Shown here piece after piece: positions 40,071 to 53,995 of a stretch of DNA of 64,000 nucleotides. This DNA is from Chrysemys picta bellii (taxonomy: Eukaryota), in contig NC_088791.1 of assembly GCF_011386835.1 (NCBI RefSeq), positions 132,184,001 through 132,248,000 on the forward strand. The letters run 5' to 3'. The notes beneath the pieces are model-generated. The model was not told where the DNA came from and did not search any database. It saw nothing but the letters and a program-made list of their open reading frames with translations. The translations under genes were made by a program, and so were the position numbers. Position 1 is the stretch's first letter. Every line of letters starts with the position of its first letter.

Positions 40071-41390
40071 CCTTAATCCCCAATTAATCCCACTGAAGTG
40101 ATAGAATAGAGGTTCATACCATGAGTAAAGGGTATCAGAATCTGGCCCTGATTGAATGAATAAACTGTAGATGGAGGCTATTTCAATGAGGTGGCAAACA
40201 GGTGAACCCACAAAAAATGGACAGTTCATACCTCCCCCAGCTTCTTGCTAAAACAGTGTAGGTGCTTAGCACCAAAAATTGCTGGAAGAGGTGCTTGAAA
40301 TCAGCTGCTTTCTAGAGGTTTTATGGATCAGGTAGGAGGGGCCAGTGCAAGAGAACCATGGAGGTTTTCCAGCAACAAGGGGGAGATGGTGTGAGACACT
40401 TTTGCCAGGAGCAAGTCCTGACCCACTAGAAACCCTGACAAGCCCAAATCTGTGGACTCCCCCCATCAGATACAGAAGTTAATTTGACACGCACACATTT
40501 TGTAAATTAACTATTAACACTTCTCTAGTTTTAATAATTCAAGAAAACCCCTTACCAACAAATAAAGCCACTATAGTAGTAGTAATTTAAACAAGTGTTT
40601 AATACAAGAAAATTTAGCAATTACTAAGAGCTGGCTTCACTGAACAACAGTCATTATTGACAGCTAACTCACATGGGGAGGAGTGTTTTTAGAGAGAGGA
40701 AGGTGTTGATATTTCATAGAAATAGAAGGGTGGCATTTTTAATGTATTTGAGGAACACATCATGGTCCACAAGACCCTCCAGAGATCAGGATGAGAAAGA
40801 ATGGCTTCATTTCATGCAACAATGCCTCCTTCTGGCCAATGTACAAAATGTGGTGGTGTTTTTTTAGTGGAATCCAGAAGGGACATCTTACACAGCCATT
40901 CTTATTTAGATGGATGATGAAATGAATTGAAGGCGACCAGGGTAAAGTCAGAGGTGGGTAAATGTGGAGTGTGGGAAAGAATAGAGGGGATCATCAGTGA
41001 GAATTCAAGAAGGTGGTAGAGGAATGCTGTGGAAATTAGTTGGGTATGTTTTTCCTATACTGAAAGGATTAAGGCTCCTCTGAAAATCCCACTCTAAGAG
41101 CTAGGTATCCAACTCCCATTGAATTTGAATGGGACTCAGGTGCCAAATTCCCATTCTAATTCAATGGGAGTTGGGTGCCTAATTCCCTTAGGCACCTTTG
41201 AAAATCCTAGCCTACATGTACTTGCAGCCAGCACTCTCTGTATGCTCAGGAACAGTTTGTAAAGTCCTTTACAAGGAGCATAGGTCAAAGGAATGGGAAG
41301 GACTAAAACCAACCCTCTTCATGCTCTGATGGTAGAAGTCATTATGTGGATGATTCAGAGAAAGCAGAAAAGCCCCTCCTCCTGGTGCCA

Positions 41391-41835
41391 TCAGCTGTAC
41401 AGCACCACAGGGTCAGAGAGGAGCTTGTAGTGGATAAGAAAGTAGGGGTAGCACTGGAAGTTGTCAAAGGCCACGTACACCTGGGGCTTGGTCACACTAT
41501 TGACACAAGAGTCATAGAGTTGCCCACCAGGCTCCTGTTCTGGGGGCCGGCGATAATGTGCTCTCCCAGCCACAGTCTTGCCCACCAAAACCTTGGCCAG
41601 GAACATGTAGCGCATCCCACCTTTCTTTGCACGGGAGTATCTGTTTGAATAGTCTGCTCTTAATGAGAAATAAATGCCCTGGCCAAAAATAGGGCTGTGC
41701 TGTTCCGGGAGGAACTGGCTGAAGTTTGTCTTGCAAATGGGCTCCACACTTCTGGCTGAGGTTCCAAAGAAGAGGTGCTTCTCCAGGTGTTGTTTCTCAA
41801 GCTTTGTTCTTCCCCAAGTCATGAATTTTTTCCGG
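41391..41835 (-). CDS. TIPARP-like: TIPARP-like gene, terminal exon (PARP catalytic domain, His replaced by Phe)
   Basis: Acceptor ctcccaattcag|c (phase 2). RKKFM...EKHLFFGTS...ICKTNF...FGQGIYFS...YS...YMFLAKVLVGK...RRPP...LYDSCVN...PQVYVAFDNFQCYPYFLIHY-stop at 41391. Confidence 0.92.
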
Positions 41836-42429
41836 CTGAATTGGGAGCAAAGAAGAAACAGAAGAAGGTTAGAGTCTCTGCCCTGAGGGGATGATGCTGA
41901 AGTTCCACAGGGAGACCATGAAGAGTAATCTCTCCCATCCATCCCTCAACTCTTACTTATGCAAAAGATAAGTAGCACAATCTTGAATTCCAGGGAACTA
42001 GGGTTCAGTCTCTTGCTTTCCAACTGAGAATTCAGAAGCACTCAAATAAACATCTACCCACAAAATCCATGCCTTAACACACTAATTAAGCCATCATGGA
42101 TGGATACATGCAACAATACACACTCATAGATGAATGCACCATCCAGTAATGCACAACTGTTCACTCACCAAATCAATATGCACAATTTATACCTACAGCA
42201 GAGCACTAGGATTCACCCAGTGCAGAGATAAGCACACTCTGGTGTAGATGAAGCAACCAATTAATGCACAAGGAAGTACCTATTAATGAACAAATATGTT
42301 TGCTTTAGTGCACTGGGACCCACAGTTCAAAGCAATAGTAGTAAGATTTTTGCTGTCAGTCTCTGAGCGTAGCAGGAACCAAAGACTAGAGGACTGATAA
42401 TAGTATTCCTATTCACAAGGAAAGAAAGA

Positions 42430-42725
42430 TGGTCCAGTGCTTAGGGTACTAGTCTCAGACTGTGGACTTGCTCTGCCACATACTTCCTGTATGATGTTGG
42501 AGAAATCATTTAGGCCAAGATCCACAAAGGTAATTAGGCCCCTACCTTCCACTGAAATCAGTGGCAGCTAAGAAACTAAATATCTTTGTGGATCAGGGCC
42601 TCAGTTCCCCATCTACAAAATGTGAATAATAGCACTTGACTGCCTCACAGGGATGTTGTGAGGATAAATACATTAAAAATAGTGATGTGCTCAAATACTG
42701 TGGTGATGGGGACCACATAAGTATC
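42430..42725 (+). mobile_element. MIR/CORE-SINE
   Basis: ctcagttccccatctacaaaatgtgaataatagcacttgactgcctcacagggatgttgtgaggataaa is the MIR core. Confidence 0.7.
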
Positions 42726-42968
42726 TAGGAAACTGGGACACTCTATTAACACAATGGGTTCTGTGGCGCTAGCGCTGGGATTCACACTCCTATCCTTTGA
42801 TGGCATTGGCATTCACAGTCCCTGCCTCTGTGTGTAGGAGCCACACCCTATAGCTCCACATTCATATTCCCAACCTCTGAGGATGGTGGGATGCTTAACC
42901 CTGGGCACCAGCACTGCAATTCACACTCCAAGGCTGTTGTCTCTAACTACATCCACTTCTCTTTTTAC

Positions 42969-43238
42969 TTGGTATATCTTTGCCAGAGATCTTCATTCCG
43001 GATCCTGTAAATTGCCAGCACCAGGACCTCATCCTCTGGAAGAGACTGGTGGAAGAGAACACAAGTAGAGCGGTATGCAGCTTCTGATGGCATCACCTCC
43101 ATTTGCAGGAAAGCCTGATCAACAGTTGGCTGTGGAATCCAAGCAGCAGGGTATGGACCATAGTAACCATCCATGGGATCTTCCCCAGGGATGTCATGAG
43201 TAGGACAGGAGGGTATACTGGCTTTACTTGGTATCATC
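42969..43238 (-). CDS. TIPARP-like: TIPARP-like exon 4 of 5 (PARP regulatory/N-terminal part)
   Basis: ctccttag|g ... accaa|gtaaaa (phase 2-2). ...GPYPAAWIPQP...EAAYRSTCVLFHQSLPE...IYRIRNEDLWQRYT parallels TIPARP YPETW...KSYRIIYNLFHKTVPE...ILRVQNQFLWEKY. Confidence 0.9.
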
Positions 43239-43325
43239 CTAAGGAGATAACGAGAGGGGAACATTTATTTTCCTACATGCTGTTGAAATGCCTGTAGGAG
43301 CATTGTTGCCAGTAGAGTCACGTAC

Positions 43326-43513
43326 TGCAGGTATGGCATCATACTGAGGAGTGATCGGTAGGAAGGCCGGCGCTGGATGTGGCGAACGTATCCCCGTTCC
43401 ATGTTATGTTGCACAAACCTCTTCAAATCCACGCTGTAGTGCTTGCCCCGGAGCTCGAAGTTGTGCAATTCCTTGTCCTCCTCAAAGGCAGAGAGGAGAT
43501 CACTGAAGATGGG
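43326..43513 (-). CDS. TIPARP-like: TIPARP-like exon 3 of 5 (second WWE, C-terminal half)
   Basis: ctcag|ccc ... ctgca|gtacgt (phase 0-2). PIFSDLLSAFEED...FELRGKHYSVDLKRFVQHNMERGYVRHIQRRPSYRSLLSMMPYLQ. Confidence 0.9.
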
Positions 43514-43805
43514 CTGAGCTCAGAGAGAATAAGAGGTGGGGATATGATGTTAGGATAAACAGGATAAAGGGAAAAATCAGGTATGCCTCCACTGTGCTCC
43601 CTCAATAGCACTCTAGCATTTCATTGGAGAAATGCCACCCCATGCTTTCTGGGAGTTTGAGGGCAGTCAGTCTGCATACAGATGCTCAGTCTCTCTTCAC
43701 CCACTTGCTTCTCCTTTAGTCATGGCTCTCTCCTATTATCATCATTCCTTTGCTTTTGCTACATTCCCCAACACTTTCAAATCTGTCTTCATCCATCCCC
43801 TTCTT

Positions 43806-44472
43806 AGGGTATGTCTGCACTACAAGTGCTACAGTGGCACATCTGCGGTGCTGCTGCAACCCCGCTGCAGTGTAGACACTTGTTACAGCAAAGAAGGCGT
43901 TTTCTGTCACTGTAGTAAATCCTCCCCCTTGAGAGCAGAATTGTTCTGTCAACTATCGGTGTCTACACCAGGGCTTAGGCTGGCTTCACTAAGTCTCTCA
44001 GGGGGGTGTATTTTTAACACCTCCTGGGTGATGTAACTAGGTCAACCTACGTTTTAGGCATAGACCAAGATTAACACAACATTCTCTTGGCCCTCACACT
44101 CCAACCTCTGCCCTGTTTCTAACCTTCCCTTTCTCAGCAAACTGCTGAAGAAATCAGCACTCATCTCTCCAACCATCTCTTCGGCCATGTCTACACTACC
44201 ACTTATCTCGGCAAAACTTATGTTGCTCAGGGGTGTGAAAAAAGCATCCCCCCAAGCGACATAAGTTTCGCCGGCATAGTGTACACAGCGCTATGTCAGC
44301 GAAAGAGTTTCCCCCGCCAACATAGCTATCCCCCACTCATTGGGGATGGTTTAATTACATCGACGGGAGAGCTCTCTCCTGTTGGCATAGAGCAGCTACA
44401 CAAGAGATCTTACAGCAGCACAGTTGCAATGGTACAGCTGTGCCGCTATAAGCTCTCTAGTGTAGACATGGC
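43806..44472. mobile_element. Two Harbinger-type MITEs (about 43806-44070 and 44184-44472)
   Basis: Ends gggtatgtctgcact...gtagacc and ggccatgtctacact...agtgtagacatggcc. A further copy lies at about 49365-49510. Confidence 0.7.
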
Positions 44473-45994
44473 CTTATTCAAGAACATCTTTGTCTATTTT
44501 TTATCTGGGCTTCCCTCTGGCCAGAGCAGAGGAGCAACTCCTCTCTAGGCAGCAAAAAAACCCACCCACCCTCCAAAACACCCTAATTTCTGCTGCCTGT
44601 GCTTTCATCAGCCGTATTGTCAGAGCAACATTTAACATTGTAGAACTGTATTCTCTGCTATGCAGACATCTCTGGTTCCCTCCTGTCATGGTTCCACTCC
44701 TATCCATGGAGCTGTGCTCTTGCTCTCTCACTGATGACAGCTACCACTTTGTGCCATGGCCCCTTATGCCCGGAATCCCACCAGCCTTAGTTCTCAGCCC
44801 ACTGCTCTCTCCTATCTGCCGTCGGCTCTTCCAGTCTCCCTCTCTACAGTGAGAGGGTTGTTGTACCCCTGACCCTTGCTTTGAAAACAGTGAGGCCATG
44901 GTTAGAAAAAAAACCAATATAAATATGATTTAAAAATTATTGGGGGAGAAAAGATTTAGGGGTTTCTGGAAGCTCTCCTCCGCTAGCTAATGTAAACCCA
45001 GTCCCTGGGCTCTGAGAAGGAGCCCCCTTAGGAATCCCTCAGGAAGAGGTCACAGTGAGAAGCTCCTCAGCAGCTCTGGAGAAGGAGGTGCCTGTACCAG
45101 CCCCTTGCTCCTTCCTCCATAACAACAGCAGGAGGTAGGGCAGGACAGCATCAAGCACTCCTCACCCTGAATATCCTGCATTAATAAGGTCAGGACCAGC
45201 ACTAATGTCTCTTCCTCCTGATACTCAGCAAGAAGAGAGGGAGCAGGTGAGCAGGCACTCCCAGAGATTGATGAGCAGGAGGTGTGGGAGTAGCAGGGGC
45301 TGGGAACAGCCCTCCTTCACACCATTTATGTGCTAGTCCAGGTGTATGTGGGACACATGGGACAAGCACCCTACAACTGTTACAGCTGCTGAAGGGTAAA
45401 GGGAAGGAGAAGGAAGTCAGCAGCTTTGGGAATGACAGCAATATAACAATATAGCAATATCCTGGCCTCCTGGATCATGGCTTTCCTGCCCATCCTCCCA
45501 CCCCCCACTGAAGAGGCAGGGTCTGCTTGGGCAGCCCTTTGATCTACCAAAAGAGAGGAGGGGAAATGAAGGCAATGTCTGCCGAGCCCCTGGCTATGGG
45601 GCTTTGTAGGGGTGCATGTAATCTGGGTCTAGCAGCAGCCAGTCTGTAAAAGGACAGCTTTGTGTCTCTCTGTTTTGGGTTCTTTTTTGTTATCATTCTG
45701 AATTCTAAGAAATAAAGTGTTTGATTGCAACCTTCCAGAAAGAGTATTTATGCTTTTATCTAACTTCTCTATGTGTATGCCACGAACTCTTGGCCTCTTC
45801 AGTCTCACTAGAGTCAACACAACAGCTTTCTCTTCTGCAGCTCCTGGTGGCTGGACGAGCCTTTCTGCAGTTACTCCCCTCACCAATCCTGTGTAATTGC
45901 ATTTATCGCAGTGGAGCATTATTTGAGGAGACAGCTCACATGAAAGACAGTAGCCAAAACATCATACCATGAGGTCTCATCCTCTTTCCCTCAC

Positions 45995-46166
45995 CTCCTC
46001 GTATTTTATCCATTTATCACCATTTTTCCAAAACACTGCCCACTGTGTGGGGAAATGGGGGTTCTGCTGTGGATCGCAGGTGTTGGAAAGACGCCTCGCT
46101 TTGTCATAGGTCTCAGAGGTTATCACTTCCAAGGAAGTCAGGGCAAGTTTCCCAGAAGAATTATTG
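45995..46166 (-). CDS. TIPARP-like: TIPARP-like exon 2 of 5 (end of WWE1, start of WWE2)
   Basis: ttttctcatag|c ... gag|gtgagg (phase 2-0). NNSSGKLALTSLEVITSETYDKARRLSNT...FPTQWAVFWKNGDKWIKYEE. Confidence 0.9.
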
Positions 46167-46621
46167 CTATGAGAAAAAATAAATAAATACATAGTTATAA
46201 GCATGTGTACTGCTGGGAGAGTGAGCCTGCGGTAGCGGCAATCTCCCTAAGGCAGTACTCCTCCACCATCCCCTATAATGCCCTCCCCTGGGAGAGACAG
46301 GGACTGGAGAAACTATGTATTCCTCACAGCCAGTGCCACCATTCTGTTCAGCACCTCCAGCTGAGAGTGGCTAGCATTGGAGCATAGCTGGGAGCTCTCC
46401 ACAGCCGGAGGTCCTTCACCATTCCCTAGAGTTCCTCCAGTAAGGGAAGACTCAACCTGTGCTAGAACAACTAGAAATCTGCCCCATTCCCTTCCTTGTC
46501 TCCTACTGTACAAGGCTAGGACCTGTGTTGAAGTGATCTCACTGCAGCTAGTTCTCTTGTGCTGTTCTTTACAGTACCTCCTGCTGGGAAATGCTGGGGC
46601 TGGAATTTTTCCATCACTTAC

Positions 46622-46905
46622 TTGTCCAAAAAATGAGCATGACTTTTGTTAACATTGCAGTAAAGATTTTCCAGGTGCCGCTGAGCTGAGTCACTCAAAC
46701 TCTGCCAGGCTTTGTTGTCGCTCCGCCTTAACTGCCAGTGGTAAGGATAGCGAGTGTGGTGGAGTGGGCAGCCAGCTCCTTCAGGACAGTTTCCTAGAAG
46801 GAAGTGATCACAGATTCTGATCCCATCTGCCTGATGGATATGGAACTGGGCCCCATCTTCACTGGCTAAGTGCTCTGGAGACCTCCTCTCATTCTGTAAA
46901 TCCAT
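46622..46905 (-). CDS. TIPARP-like: TIPARP-like first coding segment (CCCH finger and WWE1)
   Basis: ATG at 46905. HIHQADGIRICDHFLLGNCPEGAGCPLHHTRYPYHWQLRRSDNKAWQSLSDSAQRHLENLYCN closely matches the TIPARP CCCH-WWE. Donor aa|gtaagt (phase 2). The exon probably starts at acceptor 47025. The five exons total 1359 nt = 452 aa plus stop. Confidence 0.88.
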
Positions 46906-48058
46906 TGAGAAGACAATGCTATTTGTGTTCTTAGGAACTGGTTTCCCACTGGCTGAAGAAGCTCTCAGATCTCAAGGGCAGTGGAGTTGTAAAGAGCAGT
47001 TCAGTTCTTTGGAGGAACCCAACTCCTGGGAGAAAAATGGGGAAATTTAGTGAGGCAGGAAGCTGGCCGGAATGCAGAGCTTCCTACACAGGACAACTTT
47101 CTTTAGTGCTTCTCAATCCAGGCACATTGGACCACGTCTTCAAAAGTATTTAGATGCCATTGAAATCAACGGGACTTAGGCACTTAAATACCTTTGAGGA
47201 TCCGGGACAGATCCCCCAATAACTGGGCACTTGTCTTTGGCATTTTCTGCCCTCCCCAGCTGTAGCCCATGCCCCCAGGACTTTCTCCCCAATGGCAAAC
47301 CTTTCCTACTATGTGAGTCTCATGGATAGCCACTGCCCTTCCTCACATAGCTATCATCTCCTGCAAAATAAAACCAGCAGCTGGTGCAGTAAAGGGGAGT
47401 ACGATACTCCTCTGATTCTTTTGTGCTTGCTCTCTCTAGACTTTCCCACCACCTAGAGGTTCCCGCTCAGATTTATGTGCAGTGTCTTTGTCTCTAGTTT
47501 CTTCTTTTCACTTTCTCCTTTGCTCCAGTGGGAAGTGGATTCCAGACTTTCGCAGGAACCCAACTCCTGGAGGCATGAAGCTGTTCTGTGTGCGGATCCC
47601 TAGGGCTAGATTCTGGGCTGTGCCTCCAGAGAGGTGTTGTACAGAAAGCATAGTTATAGGGAATGGAATGGCCCTCAGCATAAAGTACAGGAATCCTAGC
47701 AGCTGCTATAATTTACCCCAACAATCCTGGAGCCCAGAATCCTCAAACCCCTCCCACTTCCAGCACAGCCCCTACATCGAAGCTTGCACTAGGAGAATGC
47801 TCCCTGGTCTATCACAGTCACTATACACTGCCTTAAGGGCATACAGTGGTCAGGGTGGGGACCAAAATCTGGACCCTAGTCCTCAACACCCATACACCTG
47901 TTACAGAGCCCCTTCCCCGGGCTTCATACCTTACAAACAAACACTGCTCTTCTCAAGGGATCATCCTCTCCTGAGCTTTACCTCTCGCAGTGGGATCCAA
48001 GCTCTACCCTGGCCTGACATCCCCTTTCCCCACCCCCACCCCACGTTTCTGAGGGTAA

Positions 48059-48073: not shown

Positions 48074-48574
48074 CCCCAGGGCAGTGGGGGTGGGAGGAGA
48101 AGTTAATTTCGTCGGTCTCCAGTCCCTCTCTGAGATCCTTTGATCCTCCCCACTAACTCCTGGGGCCAGCTGGTTTGGGAGAGTTACATGCTGACCAACC
48201 CAGGGCTCAGTCCCCTCCTCTCTCTGCCTCTGGAATAAACCAGGCGTTAAACCCTCACGGCAGTTGAACAGTCACCCCTGGCATTCCAGGCTCATCCCCA
48301 GGGCAGGGATACTTGTCAATCCAGTTTGCACAGCTGGGTGTAGACCACCCCTATGTTTCATGCCACTCCAATCTGCATACAGTGACCGGCAAAGCCCCTA
48401 TCCAAGAGTCAACCTGTTTCCCTCCAACTCACTCAGTCCTTCCACAGTGGGACTCCCGTAACTTTGTTGTAAGCTCCTTGCAGTAGGGACTGTCTTCCTA
48501 TGTGCTTTCACAGCACCTCCCGCAATAGGTCCCTAATCCCGATTGGGTCCTTTGGGAATGACAGCAATATAACA

Positions 48575-48813
48575 AGAGAGACAAGATGGGTGAGGTAATA
48601 TCTTTTCTTGGAACAACTTCTATTGCTGAAAGAGACAAGCTTTTGAGCTTACACAGAGCTTCTTCACGTCTAACAAAGCCAGACTTGAAGAAGAGCTCTG
48701 TGTAAGATTGAAAGCTTGTCTCTCTCTCCAACAAAAGGTGGTTCTATAAAAGATATTACCTCACCCACCTTGTCTTTCTAATGTCCTGGGACCAACATAG
48801 CTACAACCCTGCA
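48575..48813. mobile_element. Penelope-derived inverted-repeat element with 16-bp flanking duplication
   Basis: gagagacaagatgggtgaggtaatatctttt...gagctcttc and its inverse gaagagctc...aaagatattacctcacccaccttgtc. gacagcaatataacaa occurs on both sides. Confidence 0.75.
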
Positions 48814-50984
48814 GACAGCAATATAACAATGCATATGCACACATAAACTACTCCACTAGGAGCCTGTTCACCTAGGTGTCATTCTAACTCATATTCCCAT
48901 TGCTCTCCCAACAGGACTCATTTCCCTGTGTTTTAACACATAGCAGATGGGTTCACCTACAGTTTTTCCACAGTAACAGCCGCTATCCCTGGTGCCTAGA
49001 ACTCTTCCCCCCCCCCCCCCTTATTACTGGAGTGCCCATTCATCCTCCCCCAGCAGTGCTGGAGTCTCCACCCTGCCCACTCCCATTGAAGGTGTCCATC
49101 TTCTTTCCTCCAGGCCTGAGAGATACCATAAGCAGGCCAGAGCCAACCAGGTATTGAGTATCAGAGGTGCTGAGAGCATCAGATCATGAAAGAAAAATAA
49201 TTATATTGGTATAAAAAAATTATTTAGAAAGTAATTACTAAGAAAAGAGTGGATTTTTTTAAACAGGAATTTATTTTAAAGCGATCACAGAACAGCTGTC
49301 TTCACAAATTCACCCAGACCACGAAATGAAGGCGTTTAGGACAGATTTTCAAAGGCACACTTAGGGTATGTCTACACAACACACAGAAGTGAGCCTCCCA
49401 GGCCGGGTCGACAGCCCACTCAATCCCTAGGCTTCAGAGTCCCAGCCTGATCTGCAAAGTCAAAGCAATGTCTACACAGCTATTGCCCCCTAGCCCAAGG
49501 CTGACAACCCAGGATGGGAGGCTCACTTCTGTAGGCTGTGTAAACGTATTTAGGTGCCTAATTCCCAGTGGAAGTCAATGGGAAGTAGGCCAGGATCAAA
49601 ATGTCATATAATCTTTTAAAAATCTCCCCCTTCATCTTATATGTAGGCAAACAGTGCAATGAGGAATTTTATCTTGTATCAAGGCAAACAGTAAAATGAA
49701 GACATTAACTATTGGCATGTGAAATCTCCTCTGAACATTCTATTAGGTTTTTTGTTGTTGTTTTAAAAGACAGACAACACAAAAGAATTAATCTTTTGAC
49801 CAAGTGAAGTTATAAACAAAAAAGAAAGAAAAATAAGTCATGTTTAAAGATAGTCAGAATTTTTTGAGCAAATTTATATCAAAGTTATTTTTTCAAATAT
49901 TCTTTTGAAATATTACATTTAAAAAATTCAAAGCAAACATTAAATAAAAAGTGTAACCTGTTGGTAACCTGTTGGTTGCTCTTCGAAGTATTTTTCCCAC
50001 AGTTTGTTTTGTTTTTATTGAAATGCCAGGTTTTATTGGTCAGCTCAGACACATGGTGATATTATAACAAAATCAAAACTTTCATTTTTGAAAGTATCCC
50101 AATTCAAAGCTGAAAAATGTTGCTTAGAAAAATATTCTGAGAAAAAAAATCAGAACATGAAAAAGTCGAACTGTTGTGAAACACAAGACAGAACGCACTT
50201 TCAACTATGCCCAAAGTTTCTAACTATTTTTTTCCTATTTTTGACCCATTTTAATCATATTGCCCTCAGCCACAGTCCAGATGGTTTGCTTTTGGTGTTT
50301 AATGAAGTGTTTTGGTGTTTGCTTTTGGCATTAATGAAGCAGAAAGTACCTACATTACAATTTCATTTGCCCTACGCGGAAGTAAGTCATACAAAATAAC
50401 TTTATTAAACACAACCCTGTGTCCAAGTGACTTCACATGATCAAACCCCAAGGATACATCATCCTTTGTTACTGAATGACAGAAGAGTGATATGAAGGGA
50501 GCCTTTTGCACTTATTGGTCAAGACACTTCTCCTAGAAGAACACAGGAAGAGGGCCAATCGATATCCTCCATGTGGTATCATCAACAAGAGCCACTACAC
50601 ATGGACACTCATTATTTCTCTCTTTTCTTAAGTCCTCAATGTTAATACACCAAGATGAAGTGAAGCTCCACTGGTGCTTCAGTGTGACAGCTCCCACCAC
50701 AAACCATAACTGGAGCTGAGACACGGACACCTGAACAGTCCATTTTCAATGTTAATTAATCAGAGTGTTGCCTGCCATATTTCCCTCCAAATATGAGATA
50801 AGAAAGGCAAGGCACACAAGAAAGATGTCAGTCCCTTAGTACGTTAATTCATGCAGTGGGGTAGGGGAGGGCCATAACCCTTAAACTCTATCGTCCTCTT
50901 ACCCACTTGGTCCTTAGTTTTCTTTTAAAGAAAGTTGAATAGAACTAAACACCATCAAATCTTGATTAACCAAGACTCAGTTAC

Positions 50985-51001
50985 CTGTAAAACTCACTTA
51001 T
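50985..51001 (-). pseudogene. Candidate 17-nt TRIM micro-exon (phase 0-2)
   Basis: tttttcttcttcag|ATAAGTGAGTTTTACAG|gtaact, strong splice sites. Its position and phase match the short exon that follows the coiled-coil exon in TRIM genes. Confidence 0.4.
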
Positions 51002-52920
51002 CTGAAGAAGAAAAAGGTAATGCATCCCCAACATGTATTAATTTCATTGAACTTTCCCTTGATTATTCAGATTAAACAATTGCCCTATTGTGACTAGATA
51101 TTCAGAATGGTTTACCATGGAACACCTAGTCCATCCTAATTCTGCCTCATCAGTTATGGGATAGCAGCCCCCATCTAAAGTCTGCCTCTCTGGAGAAAAG
51201 TTAATACAACAAAGAAGAATTTTGCACCCAGTTTGTACCTTGTCATTCTCTTGTTTCCTTAAGATCTATTTCATTCTATTGGTTGAATGTTGACTTTATG
51301 TTTCACTGGGCTAAACAAAGAGAAGATAAGACATCTACAAGCATTTGAAGTGTTCAGGGCTGTCCAAAGGGGGAGCTGCTGTAGGAGAAGCAAGATGACA
51401 GAGTCTGTAAGACAGTGGGGCCCAATTCACCAGCCAGGGCACTCAATATGGCTCCCAACAGCAGCAGCATTTCAGAGGTGGGTTTATTTAATCCAATATA
51501 AATTAAAAAGACTAGATTATTTCCAGAAACCCACCTGCTCCAATTTAAGTCTCTCTCCTAAATTAACTCCTTTATCCCCACCCTTCAGCTGGGTTAGAGA
51601 GTTGAGGCCCCAGATCCTCTTCTCCCTCCCTGGGGTGGCTGAAAAGGCTTTCCTGTACCTTCCAGGGTCTCAACAGATTAATATGATAAATCTGCTTTTG
51701 CTTAATAGATAAATCTGCTTTTTGTCCAAGCGATACATTTCATAATCTACTGGCCCCACCTGACAGAGTAATATAAGGCATTCTTAAACCAATTTAACAG
51801 TATTCACACAAGTTACACTGGTGCACTTTCTGTGTGTAGACCAGGCCTGAGAAGAGACAGGAATTACTGTAAGTGAACTTTACTTAAAAGGCTAAACTGG
51901 GAGCTGGTTTAGGGGTTCCCATTCAATTTTTTCAGTGCAATGATGACTGAAACCCAGCTGCCTGCAGCAGAAGCATCTGGACAAGGGGAGCTGGAGCTGG
52001 GGATAGGATGGATCGGATGTCCCGTAGGCATCTGGTCAGGGGGTGGGCAGAGGGGGAAGGGGAGGAGGAAAGGGTGTTACCAGTTTTGGCTGCCTTTCAG
52101 TAAAAGCTAGTAAGATTTTAATAATGATAAATAACAACAAAGATATACATAAATTGGGGAGAAGGGAGTTTTTCCCCTTTTCTCCTCTGTTATATGTTAT
52201 ATTCAGTGCTTAATTTGTAATGAAAGAGGTGCCGGGGCCCGAGCAATTTTTTTACATTCATAACTGATGCAGCAAGCTTAGAGGTGCCGGGGCTCAGCCT
52301 TGGCACAAATTAAGCACTGGTTATATTGGAACAAATCCAAAGCCACATAGCTCTTCACAGCTGTCACTTTGCTACTGCACTCCATGGTCACTTGGAATTT
52401 CCTGGTGGCTGCAAGGGTAAAACCCATTCTCTTGCTTCGAAAGCAAAAGCTCCTATCACCTGAGTGAAAGGACACTCTCCATTATCTGTTAGCTGTGTAA
52501 AACACACGGTCAGGCAGTTTCAGTCCCAACCAGTAGTGGAGCAGTAGGACACATGCACAAGGATCCTCCTTCCCTGAGTCCCAATCACCTGTTTTCTACC
52601 AAACTGAAAGTCATAGTGTAGGTGAATATGATGTATTGAAGGGTGAATGGGTTGCTGGTATGTGTGCAGATAGATGAGAGGTGTAGATGTGTCTGTGGGA
52701 TGTGGACAGTAGGGCTGCCAGTGTTCCAGGTTTTCCCAGGATCGTCCCTTTTCTGAGGTAGCTGTCCTGGGAAATCTGGTCAGTGATCAGGGTAAGGGTG
52801 GTCAGTACACACTGCCAGCTGTCCAACTTTATGGGCTCGCAAACATCCTGGACATGCTGGGTTTTCATACCTCAGGGGTGGCAACCCTAGTGGATAGGAA
52901 TGTGAGTTTGAGATCCTCAC

Positions 52921-53154
52921 CTTGAAAAATGTGGTAAGATCTTGTTCTTGCAATCTGGCTTCTCCTTCAGAAACGGACTCCTGCCCAGAGATCAGTTCCG
53001 CTCTGATGCTGCTCAGATTTACTACCTTGTCTCTGAGGAAGGCCTCGTCCTCCTGTCTCAGTTGTCAGAGGGACACCTGTTCTCTCTCCCTCAATAACTG
53101 GTGGAGTTTGGCAGACTCACAGATGACCTGCTGGAGGTTCATCGCAACTGAGTC
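52921..53154 (-). pseudogene. TRIM coiled-coil exon (TRIM69/XNF7-like), 234 nt, with an in-frame stop
   Basis: ccatctcccag|gac ... aag|gtgagg (phase 0-0). DSVAMNLQQVICESAKLHQLLREREQVSL*QLRQEDEAFLRDKVVNLSSIRAELISGQESVSEGEARLQEQDLTTFFK. TGA at 53065-53067. Confidence 0.75.
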
Positions 53155-53517
53155 CTGGGAGATGGCAAAACAGACTGAAAACACCTGTTTATTTCACACC
53201 GTGAAAACAAATAATGTAAAAGTCACAATTTTCTAATAGATTATTTTACACACACCATACTTTCTGTTGCTTAGCTGAAGAAACAGACTCAAGGTTTCTT
53301 CTGATTTTATAAATTCGTATTCATTACCCATGATAATAATAAAAAGGGTAGCTCAGAATTGCCAGCTCTTCTGACTTTATTGAAAGTCTCATTTTTTTGT
53401 TTGTTTGTTTTTAATATTTCTTATGCTCTCCCATTTCCTGGCAGCAGAAGTGCAAATTGCAAACATTTCCCTTATCCCACCATTCCCCATGCTTACAATG
53501 GGGCTAAAGCTATAGGC

Positions 53518-53648
53518 TAGGGTAACCAGATGCTCCGATATTATCAGGACTGTCCCAGTATAGGGGGCTTTGTTTATACAGGCTACCTATTACCCTCCCC
53601 CAATACACCTGTGTCACGATTTTTCACACTTGCTATGTGGTCACCCTA
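53518..53648. mobile_element. Short MITE (tagggtgaccagatgtccc family)
   Basis: Ends tagggtaaccaga ... tgtggtcacccta. Confidence 0.75.
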
Positions 53649-53854
53649 CTACAGGCTGACCTTAGTAAAGATGACCACGATGTTACTCCAGTCTTTGTAT
53701 TTATATGTGAGTCTGTCCCTGCTAAAGATGGCTATCTTCTGTTGTTTCTAATGGTACATCCCAGGCTGCCCTCAGGAAAAATGGCCACCTCATGGGTCCT
53801 TGCTGGTTAATAGATAGAAAACGGTAGAGACAGGGAATGTAGGGGCAGTAGTTT

Positions 53855-53995
53855 CATAAAGTTTAAGGCCAAAAGGGACCATCCGATCATCTAGTCTGAC
53901 TTCCTGTAAATTCACAAGCCATTGCATTTCCCCCAGATACCTCTATGTTGAGCTCAATTACTTTAGTTAGATTAAAGAATTTTAGTCCTTGGCAG
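53855..53995 (-). mobile_element. CR1 3' fragment
   Basis: cataaagtttaaggccaaaagggaccatccgatcatctagtctgacttcctg is a reverse-complemented CR1 tail. Confidence 0.65.

What the first reader, a model, noticed from the sequence alone, without database searches (positions are those of the whole stretch)
41391..46905. Intact TIPARP paralogue with a predicted dead PARP active site (F-Y-V), convergent on ZAP/PARP13
Seen: five exons splice in frame to 452 aa (CCCH-WWE-WWE-PARP) with TIPARP-like intron positions and sequence. The NAD+-binding His of HLFHGT is TTT Phe (HLFFGTS, 41766-41768, two substitutions from His), Tyr is kept (GQGIYF), and the third triad position is Val (PQVYV). Established: TIPARP/PARP7 and PARP12 have H-Y-I and are active mono-ADP-ribosyltransferases. 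ZAP/PARP13 has Y-Y-V, is inactive and is an antiviral factor. Inference: an independent origin of a PARP pseudo-enzyme from the TIPARP branch in turtles, kept open across all exons, which suggests a retained non-catalytic immune or decoy role.
Basis: partly seen in the sequence, partly recalled or inferred. Interest (0 to 1): 0.85.

Follow-up and report, generated by a model that had tools for sequence, protein, structure and literature searches.

The report
Conserved turtle TIPARP-like gene lacking catalytic histidine
This painted-turtle gene is an intact relative of the enzyme TIPARP/PARP7 that all sampled turtles have kept under selection although its key NAD-binding histidine is replaced, so it is probably a second, independently evolved inactive PARP like the antiviral protein ZAP; its activity and role are untested.

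Summary
Five minus-strand exons (46905-41391, all GT..AG) splice to 452 aa. The product is identical to RefSeq XP_042701254.1, "TIPARP-like", of Chrysemys picta bellii. The fold is CCCH finger, WWE1, WWE2, then PARP/ART domain. The triad is F328-Y360-V424; the Phe codon TTT is at 41766-41768.

F-Y-V and the 452/453-aa length are the same in all 17 turtle orthologues fetched, including Pleurodira and soft-shells. dN/dS is 0.15-0.33 overall and 0.10-0.23 in the ART domain, so this is not a pseudogene. It is also not the ZAP orthologue. It sits in an old "TIPARP-like" clade found from bony fish to reptiles, apart from TIPARP proper and from PARP12/ZAP.

The histidine was probably lost before the gene arose. 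A sister paralogue 4 Mb away has Y-Y-V, exactly ZAP's triad. The codons read CAT, TAT, TTT, one step each. Two scincoid lizard genes with Y-Y-I may share the loss.

Loss of activity is inferred, from the published TIPARP H532A result. An immune or decoy role has no support yet. RNA evidence is one exon1-exon2 junction contig, and an antisense transcript overlaps exons 3-5. The scan also noted this stretch as s1-325563.

The parts
46622..46905 (-). Exon 1. Start codon at 46905-46903; CCCH zinc finger (C32, C40, C46, H50 = 46812-46756); first half of WWE1.
   Evidence: Weak Pfam zf-CCCH and WWE_4 hits. C32, C40, C46 and H50 are invariant in 47 family members. The exon1-exon2 junction is present in an RNA-type contig of run X6.
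45995..46166 (-). Exon 2. End of WWE1 and start of WWE2, including W137 and W141.
   Evidence: W141 (46028-46030) aligns with index 114 of the ZAP chain. That is W611, the adenine-stacking Trp, if the chain covers residues 498-699.
43326..43513 (-). Exon 3. Rest of WWE2.
   Evidence: Pfam WWE PF02825 at 2.4e-4, above the curated cut-off. Fold match to 7kzh and to single WWE domains.
42969..43238 (-). Exon 4. Low-confidence linker (aa 218-227), then the N-terminal helices and strands of the ART fold.
   Evidence: AF2 pLDDT profile. The PDB alignment to PARP12 starts at aa 255.
41391..41835 (-). Exon 5. ART core with all three triad positions, and the stop codon at 41393-41391.
   Evidence: Pfam PARP PF00644 at 6.1e-16. 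Same acceptor position and phase as TIPARP and all paralogues.
41766..41768 (-). Phe328 codon TTT, in place of the NAD-binding His.
   Evidence: TTT in Chrysemys, Emydura, Pelodiscus, Chelonia and Gopherus. TAT in paralogue B; CAT or CAC in the other paralogues.
41670..41672 (-). Tyr360 codon, the second triad position, retained.
   Evidence: Invariant in the family.
41478..41480 (-). Val424 codon GTG, the third triad position (Ile in most of the family).
41703..41720 (-). Remodelled D-loop: S344, Q345 and E349, where the family has D, P and G.
   Evidence: Gly349 is present in 39 of 39 other members and lost in both A and B. D344 and P345 are lost in A only.

Best explanation
This is a functional protein-coding gene, called group A here, of a sauropsid-expanded TIPARP-like family. 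It encodes a compact CCCH finger, WWE1, WWE2 and ART-fold protein whose ART domain has most likely lost ADP-ribosyltransferase activity. It is kept for a non-catalytic job.

Shown:
- The gene model and the fold.
- F-Y-V fixed across turtles.
- Strong purifying selection on every domain.
- Placement in the TIPARP-like clade, with a Y-Y-V sister paralogue.

Inferred:
- History: the ancestor of A and B changed His (CAT) to Tyr (TAT) and lost the D-loop Gly. Group A then changed Tyr to Phe (TTT) and altered two more D-loop residues.
- Mechanism: without the His that holds NAD+, the protein does not transfer ADP-ribose. It probably acts through its ZnF-WWE module, which keeps the Trp that ZAP uses to bind ADP-ribose, and through surfaces of the rigid ART fold. 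That would make it a reader or scaffold for ADP-ribosylated partners, or a competitor of the active TIPARP-like enzymes. This resembles the C-terminal two thirds of ZAP-L.
For: - Gene model and identity to RefSeq.
- Identical exon structure, reproducing the annotated proteins exactly in Emydura, Pelodiscus, Chelonia and Gopherus.
- F-Y-V in 17 of 17 orthologues from Cheloniidae, Emydidae, Geoemydidae, Testudinidae, Trionychidae and Pleurodira.
- Among 291 PARP motifs fetched, Phe occurs only in this group.
- NG86 dN/dS is 0.15-0.33 overall and 0.10-0.23 for the ART domain, with dS up to 0.26-0.39. Binomial p = 6e-17 for the whole gene and 2.5e-8 for the ART domain.
- Careful ML tree: A+B 98/95, the sauropsid clade 100/100, TIPARP proper and PARP12/ZAP outside. 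Outgroup names.
- Shared derived sites 328, 349, 362 and 417 in A and B.
- Codon path CAT, TAT, TTT.
- AF2 pLDDT 87, pTM 0.85. ART fold TM 0.9 to PARP12. ZnF-WWE-WWE TM 0.72/0.77 to ZAP 7kzh.
- W141 aligns with ZAP W611, if chain 7kzh covers residues 498-699.
- Published: a single H532A change destroys TIPARP activity (PMC8404992). ZAP's Y-Y-V positions are needed for its antiviral function although it is inactive (10.1101/2021.06.22.449398).
Against: - No enzymatic or NAD-binding measurement exists for a Phe at this position.
- The rest of the nicotinamide pocket (G329, Y360, S368, Y371) is retained. The ART domain is also the most constrained part. Both would fit residual or altered catalysis equally well.
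- RNA evidence for the sense mRNA is one low-depth junction contig from a close relative.
- All 22 members of the orthologue cluster carry source names, and the 15 listed come from NCBI or UniRef, none from Logan read assemblies. TIPARP proper has many Logan-derived entries.
- Most RNA-type contigs over exons 3-5 fit an antisense transcript better.
- Nothing links the gene to immunity. The one ISRE-like core upstream is not conserved.
Confidence: 0.6

Rival explanations
1. The protein is still an ADP-ribosyltransferase with an unusual F-Y-V site. The aromatic Phe stacks on NAD+ in place of the His hydrogen bond. The strong constraint on the ART domain then reflects catalysis, perhaps with changed substrate or kinetics.
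For: G329, Y360, S368 and Y371 are retained. The ART domain has the lowest dN/dS. The ART fold is predicted with high confidence and is close to the active PARP12.
Against: TIPARP H532A is catalytically dead (PMC8404992). The D-loop Gly, invariant in 39 of 39 other members, is also lost, and two further D-loop residues are changed. The sister lineage carries exactly the triad of the inactive ZAP.
Confidence: 0.2
2. The gene is a dominant-negative or decoy regulator of the interferon or AHR circuits run by TIPARP-type enzymes. This is a specific sub-case of the non-catalytic reading.
For: It keeps the same ZnF-WWE-ART architecture as the active paralogues, without the long N-terminal region. 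PARP7 is a known negative regulator of type I interferon signalling (PMC11837972 abstract). ZAP is a precedent.
Against: No conserved ISRE, GAS or AHRE element within about 1.6 kb upstream. There are no expression data after immune stimulus. dN/dS shows no sign of an arms race at the resolution available; all regions are below 0.55.
Confidence: 0.15
3. It is a young or neutrally drifting pseudogene that happens to be open.
For: None beyond the missing His and the thin RNA evidence.
Against: Length and splice sites are unchanged in lineages that include both turtle suborders. dN/dS is far below 1, with p = 6e-17.
Confidence: 0.01
4. It is the turtle orthologue of ZAP/PARP13.
For: A ZAP-like triad and a ZnF5-WWE1-WWE2-like fold.
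Against: - It groups with the TIPARP family, with a frog ZAP-like protein and a fish PARP12 as outgroup.
- It has the single terminal ART exon of TIPARP, not the split ART exons seen in the PARP12-like and PARP11-like loci.
- It has no N-terminal four-finger RNA-binding domain and no CaaX box.
- A separate locus ending in CVIL at chr1:103.99 Mb is the likely ZAP.
Confidence: 0.01

Closest known systems
ZAP / PARP13 (ZC3HAV1), long isoform
   Same: Both have a CCCH finger, WWE1, WWE2 and ART fold, with the catalytic His replaced by an aromatic residue and Val at the third triad position. The adenine-stacking Trp of WWE2 appears to be retained. Both are kept by selection although the predicted site is dead.
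   Different: This gene comes from the TIPARP branch, not from PARP12. It has no N-terminal four-finger CpG-RNA-binding domain and no CaaX farnesylation box. It has Phe rather than Tyr. Its ART domain lies in one exon. No antiviral activity is known.
TIPARP / PARP7
   Same: Same family and domain order, the same last-intron position and phase, and the YPYF motif near the C terminus.
   Different: Identity is only about 36%. The true TIPARP is a separate gene on contig 9 of this genome. TIPARP has H-Y-I, is active, and carries a long N-terminal region that is absent here.
Turtle TIPARP-like paralogue B (chr1:136.2 Mb in this genome; P0158, P0159, P0161)
   Same: It is the sister gene (98/95). 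It has the same exon lengths 188, 270 and 445. It shares loss of His328 and Gly349, plus S362 and N417, and is also under purifying selection.
   Different: B has Tyr (Y-Y-V). It keeps D344 and P345. It has an extra coding exon and an N-terminal extension of about 65 aa starting MGQNNS.
PARP9 (Q-Y-T)
   Same: It is another vertebrate PARP whose His is replaced and which works mainly through partners (own knowledge; mentioned as inactive).
   Different: PARP9 belongs to a different subfamily (macro-PARP) with different domains. It was not compared here.

Membership tests
PARP/ARTD superfamily (ART fold) | Sequence and fold of the PARP catalytic domain | tested here: met
   Pfam PF00644 at 6.1e-16. 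PARP12 2pqf at E 2e-30. Foldseek TM 0.9.
Catalytically competent H-Y-[E/I/L] PARPs | His at the first triad position | tested here: not met
   Phe328 (TTT) aligns with the His of PARP12 and of 37 of 39 family members.
Catalytically competent H-Y-[E/I/L] PARPs | Tyr at the second triad position | tested here: met
   Y360 is invariant.
Catalytically competent H-Y-[E/I/L] PARPs | Measured ADP-ribosyltransferase activity | not testable with these tools
   Needs a biochemical assay.
TIPARP/PARP7 orthologue | Groups with TIPARP proper in a tree | tested here: not met
   It lies in a separate clade. TIPARP proper forms its own 100/100 clade, and a separate locus on contig 9 matches TIPARP proteins.
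TIPARP-like clade (RefSeq name; bony fish to reptiles) | Groups within the clade; ZnF-WWE-WWE-ART order; single terminal ART exon | tested here: met
   Collinear with the 456-aa member P0017.
ZAP/PARP13 | Descent from the PARP12/ZAP lineage | tested here: not met
   PARP12 and ZAP-like proteins are the outgroup. The ART domain has a different exon structure.
ZAP/PARP13 | N-terminal four-CCCH RNA-binding domain | tested here: not met
   The protein starts about 30 aa before its single finger, and an in-frame stop lies upstream in the same exon.
ZAP/PARP13 | Degenerate triad with an aromatic residue for His and Val at the third position | tested here: met
   F-Y-V here and Y-Y-V in sister B. ZAP is Y-Y-V.
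ZAP/PARP13 | C-terminal CaaX box (long isoform) | tested here: not met
   The C terminus is ...DPVVLYS, with no Cys.
Pseudogene | Frame disruption or neutral dN/dS | tested here: not met
   The frame is open and the splice sites intact in 5 species. dN/dS is 0.15-0.33, p = 6e-17.

The most novel reading that the evidence does not exclude
Groups A (F-Y-V) and B (Y-Y-V) of turtles, perhaps with the Y-Y-I genes of scincoid lizards, are one ancient sauropsid lineage of pseudo-PARPs derived from the TIPARP branch. They would be a second, independent invention of a ZAP-like ZnF-WWE-WWE-dead-ART module. They would act as ADP-ribose-reading scaffolds or antagonists in interferon or antiviral or xenobiotic signalling, controlled in part by the antisense transcript seen here.
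Probability: 0.2. Interest if true: 0.7.

Novelty: new variant of a known kind. Interest (0 to 1): 0.5.

Why it matters
Only two vertebrate PARPs are generally treated as inactive, PARP13/ZAP and PARP9. ZAP's dead ART domain is nevertheless essential for its antiviral function, for reasons not yet understood.

A second lineage arose independently from the TIPARP branch. It lost the same His, gained the same Val, and has been held under selection across both turtle suborders. That gives a natural replicate for asking what a dead ART domain attached to a ZnF-WWE-WWE module is good for.

The finding also shows that the RefSeq label "TIPARP-like" hides an old gene family of at least six turtle members. 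In the hits listed here the family is missing from mammals, birds and crocodilians. No paper found here describes it.

Tried and rejected
- Upstream coding exons or a longer N terminus: rejected. An in-frame stop lies 22 codons upstream in the same exon. RNA-type contigs run unspliced to at least 47058. The 17 annotated orthologues are 452/453 aa, apart from two shorter entries (432 and 143 aa).
- TRIM-like remnant upstream (note s1-325634): ten minus-strand open stretches between 48501 and 53942 gave no TRIM, B-box or SPRY Pfam hit. This was only a light check.
- Interferon or AHR control elements: one ISRE-like core, GAAAGTGAAA, lies at 47506-47515, 610 bp upstream. It is not conserved in Emydura, Pelodiscus, Chelonia or Gopherus. 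No AHRE or 3-spaced GAS lies within about 1.6 kb; the 4-spaced GAS-like and NF-kB-like matches were not checked further.
- RNA support: both run searches listed no run on record as RNA. Laying four runs gave one sense junction (46166|46622, run X6) and no contig across the other three introns.
- Single origin of the His loss in turtles plus lizards: the free tree does not show it, but the AU test does not reject it (p = 0.237). Left open.
- Pelodiscus paralogue B (P0161): its DNA was not on record, so B's dN/dS rests on three cryptodires only.
- Supplementary expression tables of the painted-turtle genome paper are not held. Its text mentions only Tiparp proper.
- Tandem copies in the window: none.
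Full report
**Observation**

On the minus strand, five open stretches join through canonical GT..AG introns. The exons are 46905-46622, 46166-45995, 43513-43326, 43238-42969 and 41835-41391. They give a 1359-nt frame of 452 codons plus stop. The ATG is preceded in the same exon by an in-frame stop 22 codons upstream.

The product is 100% identical to P0275, RefSeq XP_042701254.1, "protein mono-ADP-ribosyltransferase TIPARP-like" of Chrysemys picta bellii. The window is therefore painted-turtle chromosome 1 (G000:C1:132.18-132.25 Mb), and the gene is already annotated.

HLFFGT lies at aa 325-330. Phe328 is TTT at 41766-41768, Tyr360 is at 41670-41672 and Val424 is at 41478-41480.

**Domains and fold**

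- Pfam finds the PARP catalytic domain in exon 5 (6.1e-16) and WWE in exon 3. Exon 1 gives weak CCCH and WWE_4 hits.
- An AlphaFold2 model built on 47 family members has pLDDT 87 and pTM 0.85.
- Its C-terminal part superposes on human PARP12, PARP14 and PARP15 catalytic domains, with TM about 0.9 and rmsd about 2 Å.
- A separate model of aa 18-215 has pLDDT 92.8. Its best match is the ZAP ZnF5-WWE1-WWE2 central domain 7kzh (E 3.6e-12, TM 0.72/0.77). Its second WWE matches ADP-ribose-bound WWE domains of RNF146, HUWE1 and TRIP12.
- In the sequence alignment to 7kzh, W141 pairs with chain index 114. That is W611, the Trp that stacks on adenine in ZAP (PMC9720839), if the chain covers residues 498-699. 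This numbering is my inference.
- In the alignment to PARP12 (2pqf), Phe328 sits opposite the catalytic His.

**Paralogues in the same genome**

A six-frame search with exon 5 finds seven further loci about 42-54% identical that keep the C-terminal YPYF motif. By best protein matches, they are as follows.

| Group | Place | Triad or His motif |
|---|---|---|
| C | chr1:109.5 Mb | His kept (HLFHST) |
| B | chr1:136.2 Mb | HLFYGS, Y-Y-V |
| D | contig 22 | His kept |
| E | chr1:347.9 Mb | His kept |
| F | chr1:204.3 Mb | His kept |
| G | contig 16 (an older type) | His kept |
| TIPARP proper | contig 9 | H-Y-I |

- A frameshifted remnant lies on contig 13.
- PARP12-like, ZAP-like (ending CVIL) and PARP11-like loci are separate.
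- In the PARP12-like and PARP11-like loci the exon with the His motif ends right after YGKG, so the ART core is split.
- In every TIPARP-family locus, including TIPARP proper, the whole core lies in one terminal exon with the acceptor at the same place and phase.

**Orthologues and fixation**

The 90% cluster of this protein holds 22 sequences. All named ones are 452 aa, apart from one 143-aa fragment. They come from Lepidochelys, Caretta, Chelonia, Eretmochelys, Natator, Mauremys (two species), Pangshura, Trachemys, Chrysemys, Chelonoidis, Gopherus and the pleurodire Emydura. Pelodiscus has a 453-aa orthologue.

- Identity to the window's protein runs from 99% (Trachemys) to 90% (Emydura) and 86% (Pelodiscus).
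- All 17 fetched orthologues read F-Y-V.
- The DNA of Emydura, Pelodiscus, Chelonia and Gopherus has the same five exons, the same lengths and GT..AG at every junction. It reproduces the annotated proteins exactly. The codon is TTT in all five species.
- Contigs of three runs from two coded organisms cover the codon without any variant.

**Selection**

| Comparison (Nei-Gojobori) | dN/dS |
|---|---|
| Group A, whole gene, all pairs | 0.15-0.33 |
| Group A, ART domain | 0.10-0.23 |
| Group B, exons 2-6 (three cryptodires) | 0.26-0.43 |
| Group B, ART domain | 0.16-0.21 |

- For Chrysemys against Emydura, dN is 0.044 and dS is 0.26.
- The ART domain is the most constrained part in the deep comparisons.
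- The excess of synonymous change is significant: binomial p = 6e-17 for the gene and 2.5e-8 for the ART domain.
- A neutral pseudogene is excluded.

**Phylogeny**

A careful ML tree used 67 proteins and 492 columns under LG+C20+F+G4. It was rooted on a fish PARP12, a frog ZAP-like protein and one unnamed relative (names).

- TIPARP proper falls in its own clade (100/100).
- The window's gene falls in a different, older clade of "TIPARP-like" proteins. That clade also holds lungfish, sturgeon, paddlefish, bowfin and gar, a caecilian, lizards and turtles.
- Within a 23-sequence reptile clade (100/100), group A is sister to group B (98/95).
- Group A holds both Emydura and Pelodiscus, and group B holds Pelodiscus. 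So the A/B duplication predates the turtle crown group.
- No mammal, bird or crocodilian TIPARP-like protein appeared among the listed hits of three database searches. This is absence from hit lists, not a proof of loss.

**History of the active site**

- Against residues that are at least 80% conserved in the other 39 members, group A differs at only seven positions. Five of them lie in the ART core (328, 344, 345, 349, 362); the others are 302 and 417.
- Four of the seven are shared with B: non-His328, loss of Gly349 in the D-loop (Gly in 39 of 39 others), S362 and N417. S344 and Q/H345 are A-only.
- The codons are CAT or CAC in the His-bearing paralogues, TAT in B and TTT in A. The "two substitutions from His" are therefore best read as two single steps through a Tyr ancestor shared with B.
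- Two scincoid lizard proteins (Hemicordylus, Lerista) read Y-Y-I. They share with A and B a "PI[YF]G" motif before the Tyr loop that no other group has.
- The free tree puts these lizard proteins next to group C with weak support (88/55). Forcing A, B and these lizards together costs 8.5 log-likelihood units and is not rejected (AU p = 0.237). One old loss in an early reptile, or two parallel losses, both remain possible.

**Is it inactive?**

This is inference. A single H532A change destroys TIPARP activity (PMC8404992). ZAP, with Y-Y-V, does not bind NAD+, yet needs those residues for antiviral function (10.1101/2021.06.22.449398). Here the His is gone, the invariant D-loop Gly is gone and the third position is Val.

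Against this, G329, Y360, S368 and Y371 of the nicotinamide pocket remain. The domain is also tightly constrained. Residual or altered catalysis therefore keeps about one chance in five.

**Expression**

- No run on record as RNA holds the stretch.
- Four runs whose contig totals (72-202 Mb) and local coverage look like RNA were laid on 41250-47100.
- One contig of run X6 joins 46166 to 46622 with CT..AC ends. On the minus strand that is GT..AG, exactly the predicted exon1-exon2 junction. X6 is from a relative about 0.8% divergent, and the contig depth is 3.8.
- Other contigs run unspliced from 46702 to 47058, as expected for a 5' UTR.
- No contig shows the other three junctions.
- Instead, contigs cover 41250 to about 45700 without gaps, then stop. 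Run X25 has two joints, 43149 to 45228 and 43149 to 45341, with GT..AG on the plus strand. An AATAAA lies at 45711-45716 on the plus strand. So a spliced plus-strand transcript overlaps exons 3-5 in antisense, and it probably explains most of the RNA signal over the ART exon.
- All 22 members of the orthologue cluster carry source names, and the 15 listed come from NCBI or UniRef, none from Logan read assemblies. TIPARP proper has many Logan-derived entries. That fits low or restricted sense expression.

**Function**

An immune or decoy role is untested.

- One ISRE-like core lies 610 bp upstream, but it is not conserved in four other turtles.
- No region shows dN/dS above 0.55.
- The painted-turtle literature mentions only Tiparp proper, as induced by anoxia.
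- No paper found here describes the TIPARP-like family or its His-less members.

**Verdict**

The gene is real, old and selected, and it is not the ZAP orthologue. The convergence on the ZAP-type triad is real, but it belongs to a pair of turtle paralogues (A and B), and perhaps to a wider reptile lineage, inside an undescribed TIPARP-like family. Loss of activity and any immune role remain predictions.

Noticed in passing
window 41250-43150 and 45230/45342 to about 45730, + strand: A spliced plus-strand transcript lies antisense to exons 3-5 of the PARP gene. Run X25 shows joints 43149 to 45228 and 43149 to 45341 with GT..AG on the plus strand. Contig coverage stops near 45700-45780. An AATAAA lies at 45711-45716. 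Its 5' end lies upstream of 41250 and was not traced.
   Followed up: partly
L025:5088-8412 (G000:C1:136.2196-136.2229 Mb, + strand): Sister paralogue B is intact in the painted turtle. Its triad is Y-Y-V (Tyr codon TAT), the same as ZAP. Its dN/dS is 0.26-0.43. The predicted N terminus MGQNNS fits an N-myristoylation signal, which would parallel ZAP-L's lipid anchor. The first-exon donor in Chrysemys was not resolved.
   Followed up: partly
L017/L018 (G000:C13:43.307-43.310 Mb): A TIPARP-like ART exon here is matched in two overlapping pieces in different frames. It is probably a frameshifted, decayed copy.
   Followed up: no
L002, L004, L005, L006, L007, L008 (G000 chr1:109.5, contig 22:18.6, chr1:347.9, chr1:204.3, contig 16:3.2, contig 9:24.2 Mb): The genome holds five more TIPARP-like genes with an intact His, plus TIPARP proper. 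All have the ART core in one terminal exon with the same acceptor phase. The locus at chr1:347.9 Mb is the one noted by the scan as s1-318391.
   Followed up: partly
window 47506-47515, - strand: An ISRE/IRF-like core, GAAAGTGAAA, lies 610 bp upstream of the ATG. Four other turtles read GAAAGTGAGA or more diverged variants at this place, so the core is not conserved.
   Followed up: yes
window 48501-53942, - strand: Ten open stretches in the region that another note calls a TRIM69/XNF7-like remnant gave no TRIM, B-box, coiled-coil or SPRY Pfam hit at E up to 1. Short or decayed exons could have been missed.
   Followed up: partly
L019:19183-23599, L020:22547-26188: In Emydura and Pelodiscus a C2H2 zinc-finger gene lies 4-6 kb downstream of the orthologue, in the same orientation. 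This fits the zinc-finger genes in the window, so the neighbourhood is conserved between the two turtle suborders.
   Followed up: no
L012 (G000:C1:103.987-103.991 Mb): The likely true ZAP orthologue ends in a CaaX box (CVIL) and has Ile, not Val, at the third triad position. Its His-motif exon was outside the fetched stretch.
   Followed up: no
P0001 (709 aa, source not looked up): The top hit of the representative search carries three tandem WWE-less PARP catalytic domains in one predicted protein. It is either a tandem gene array fused by annotation or a true multi-ART protein.
   Followed up: no
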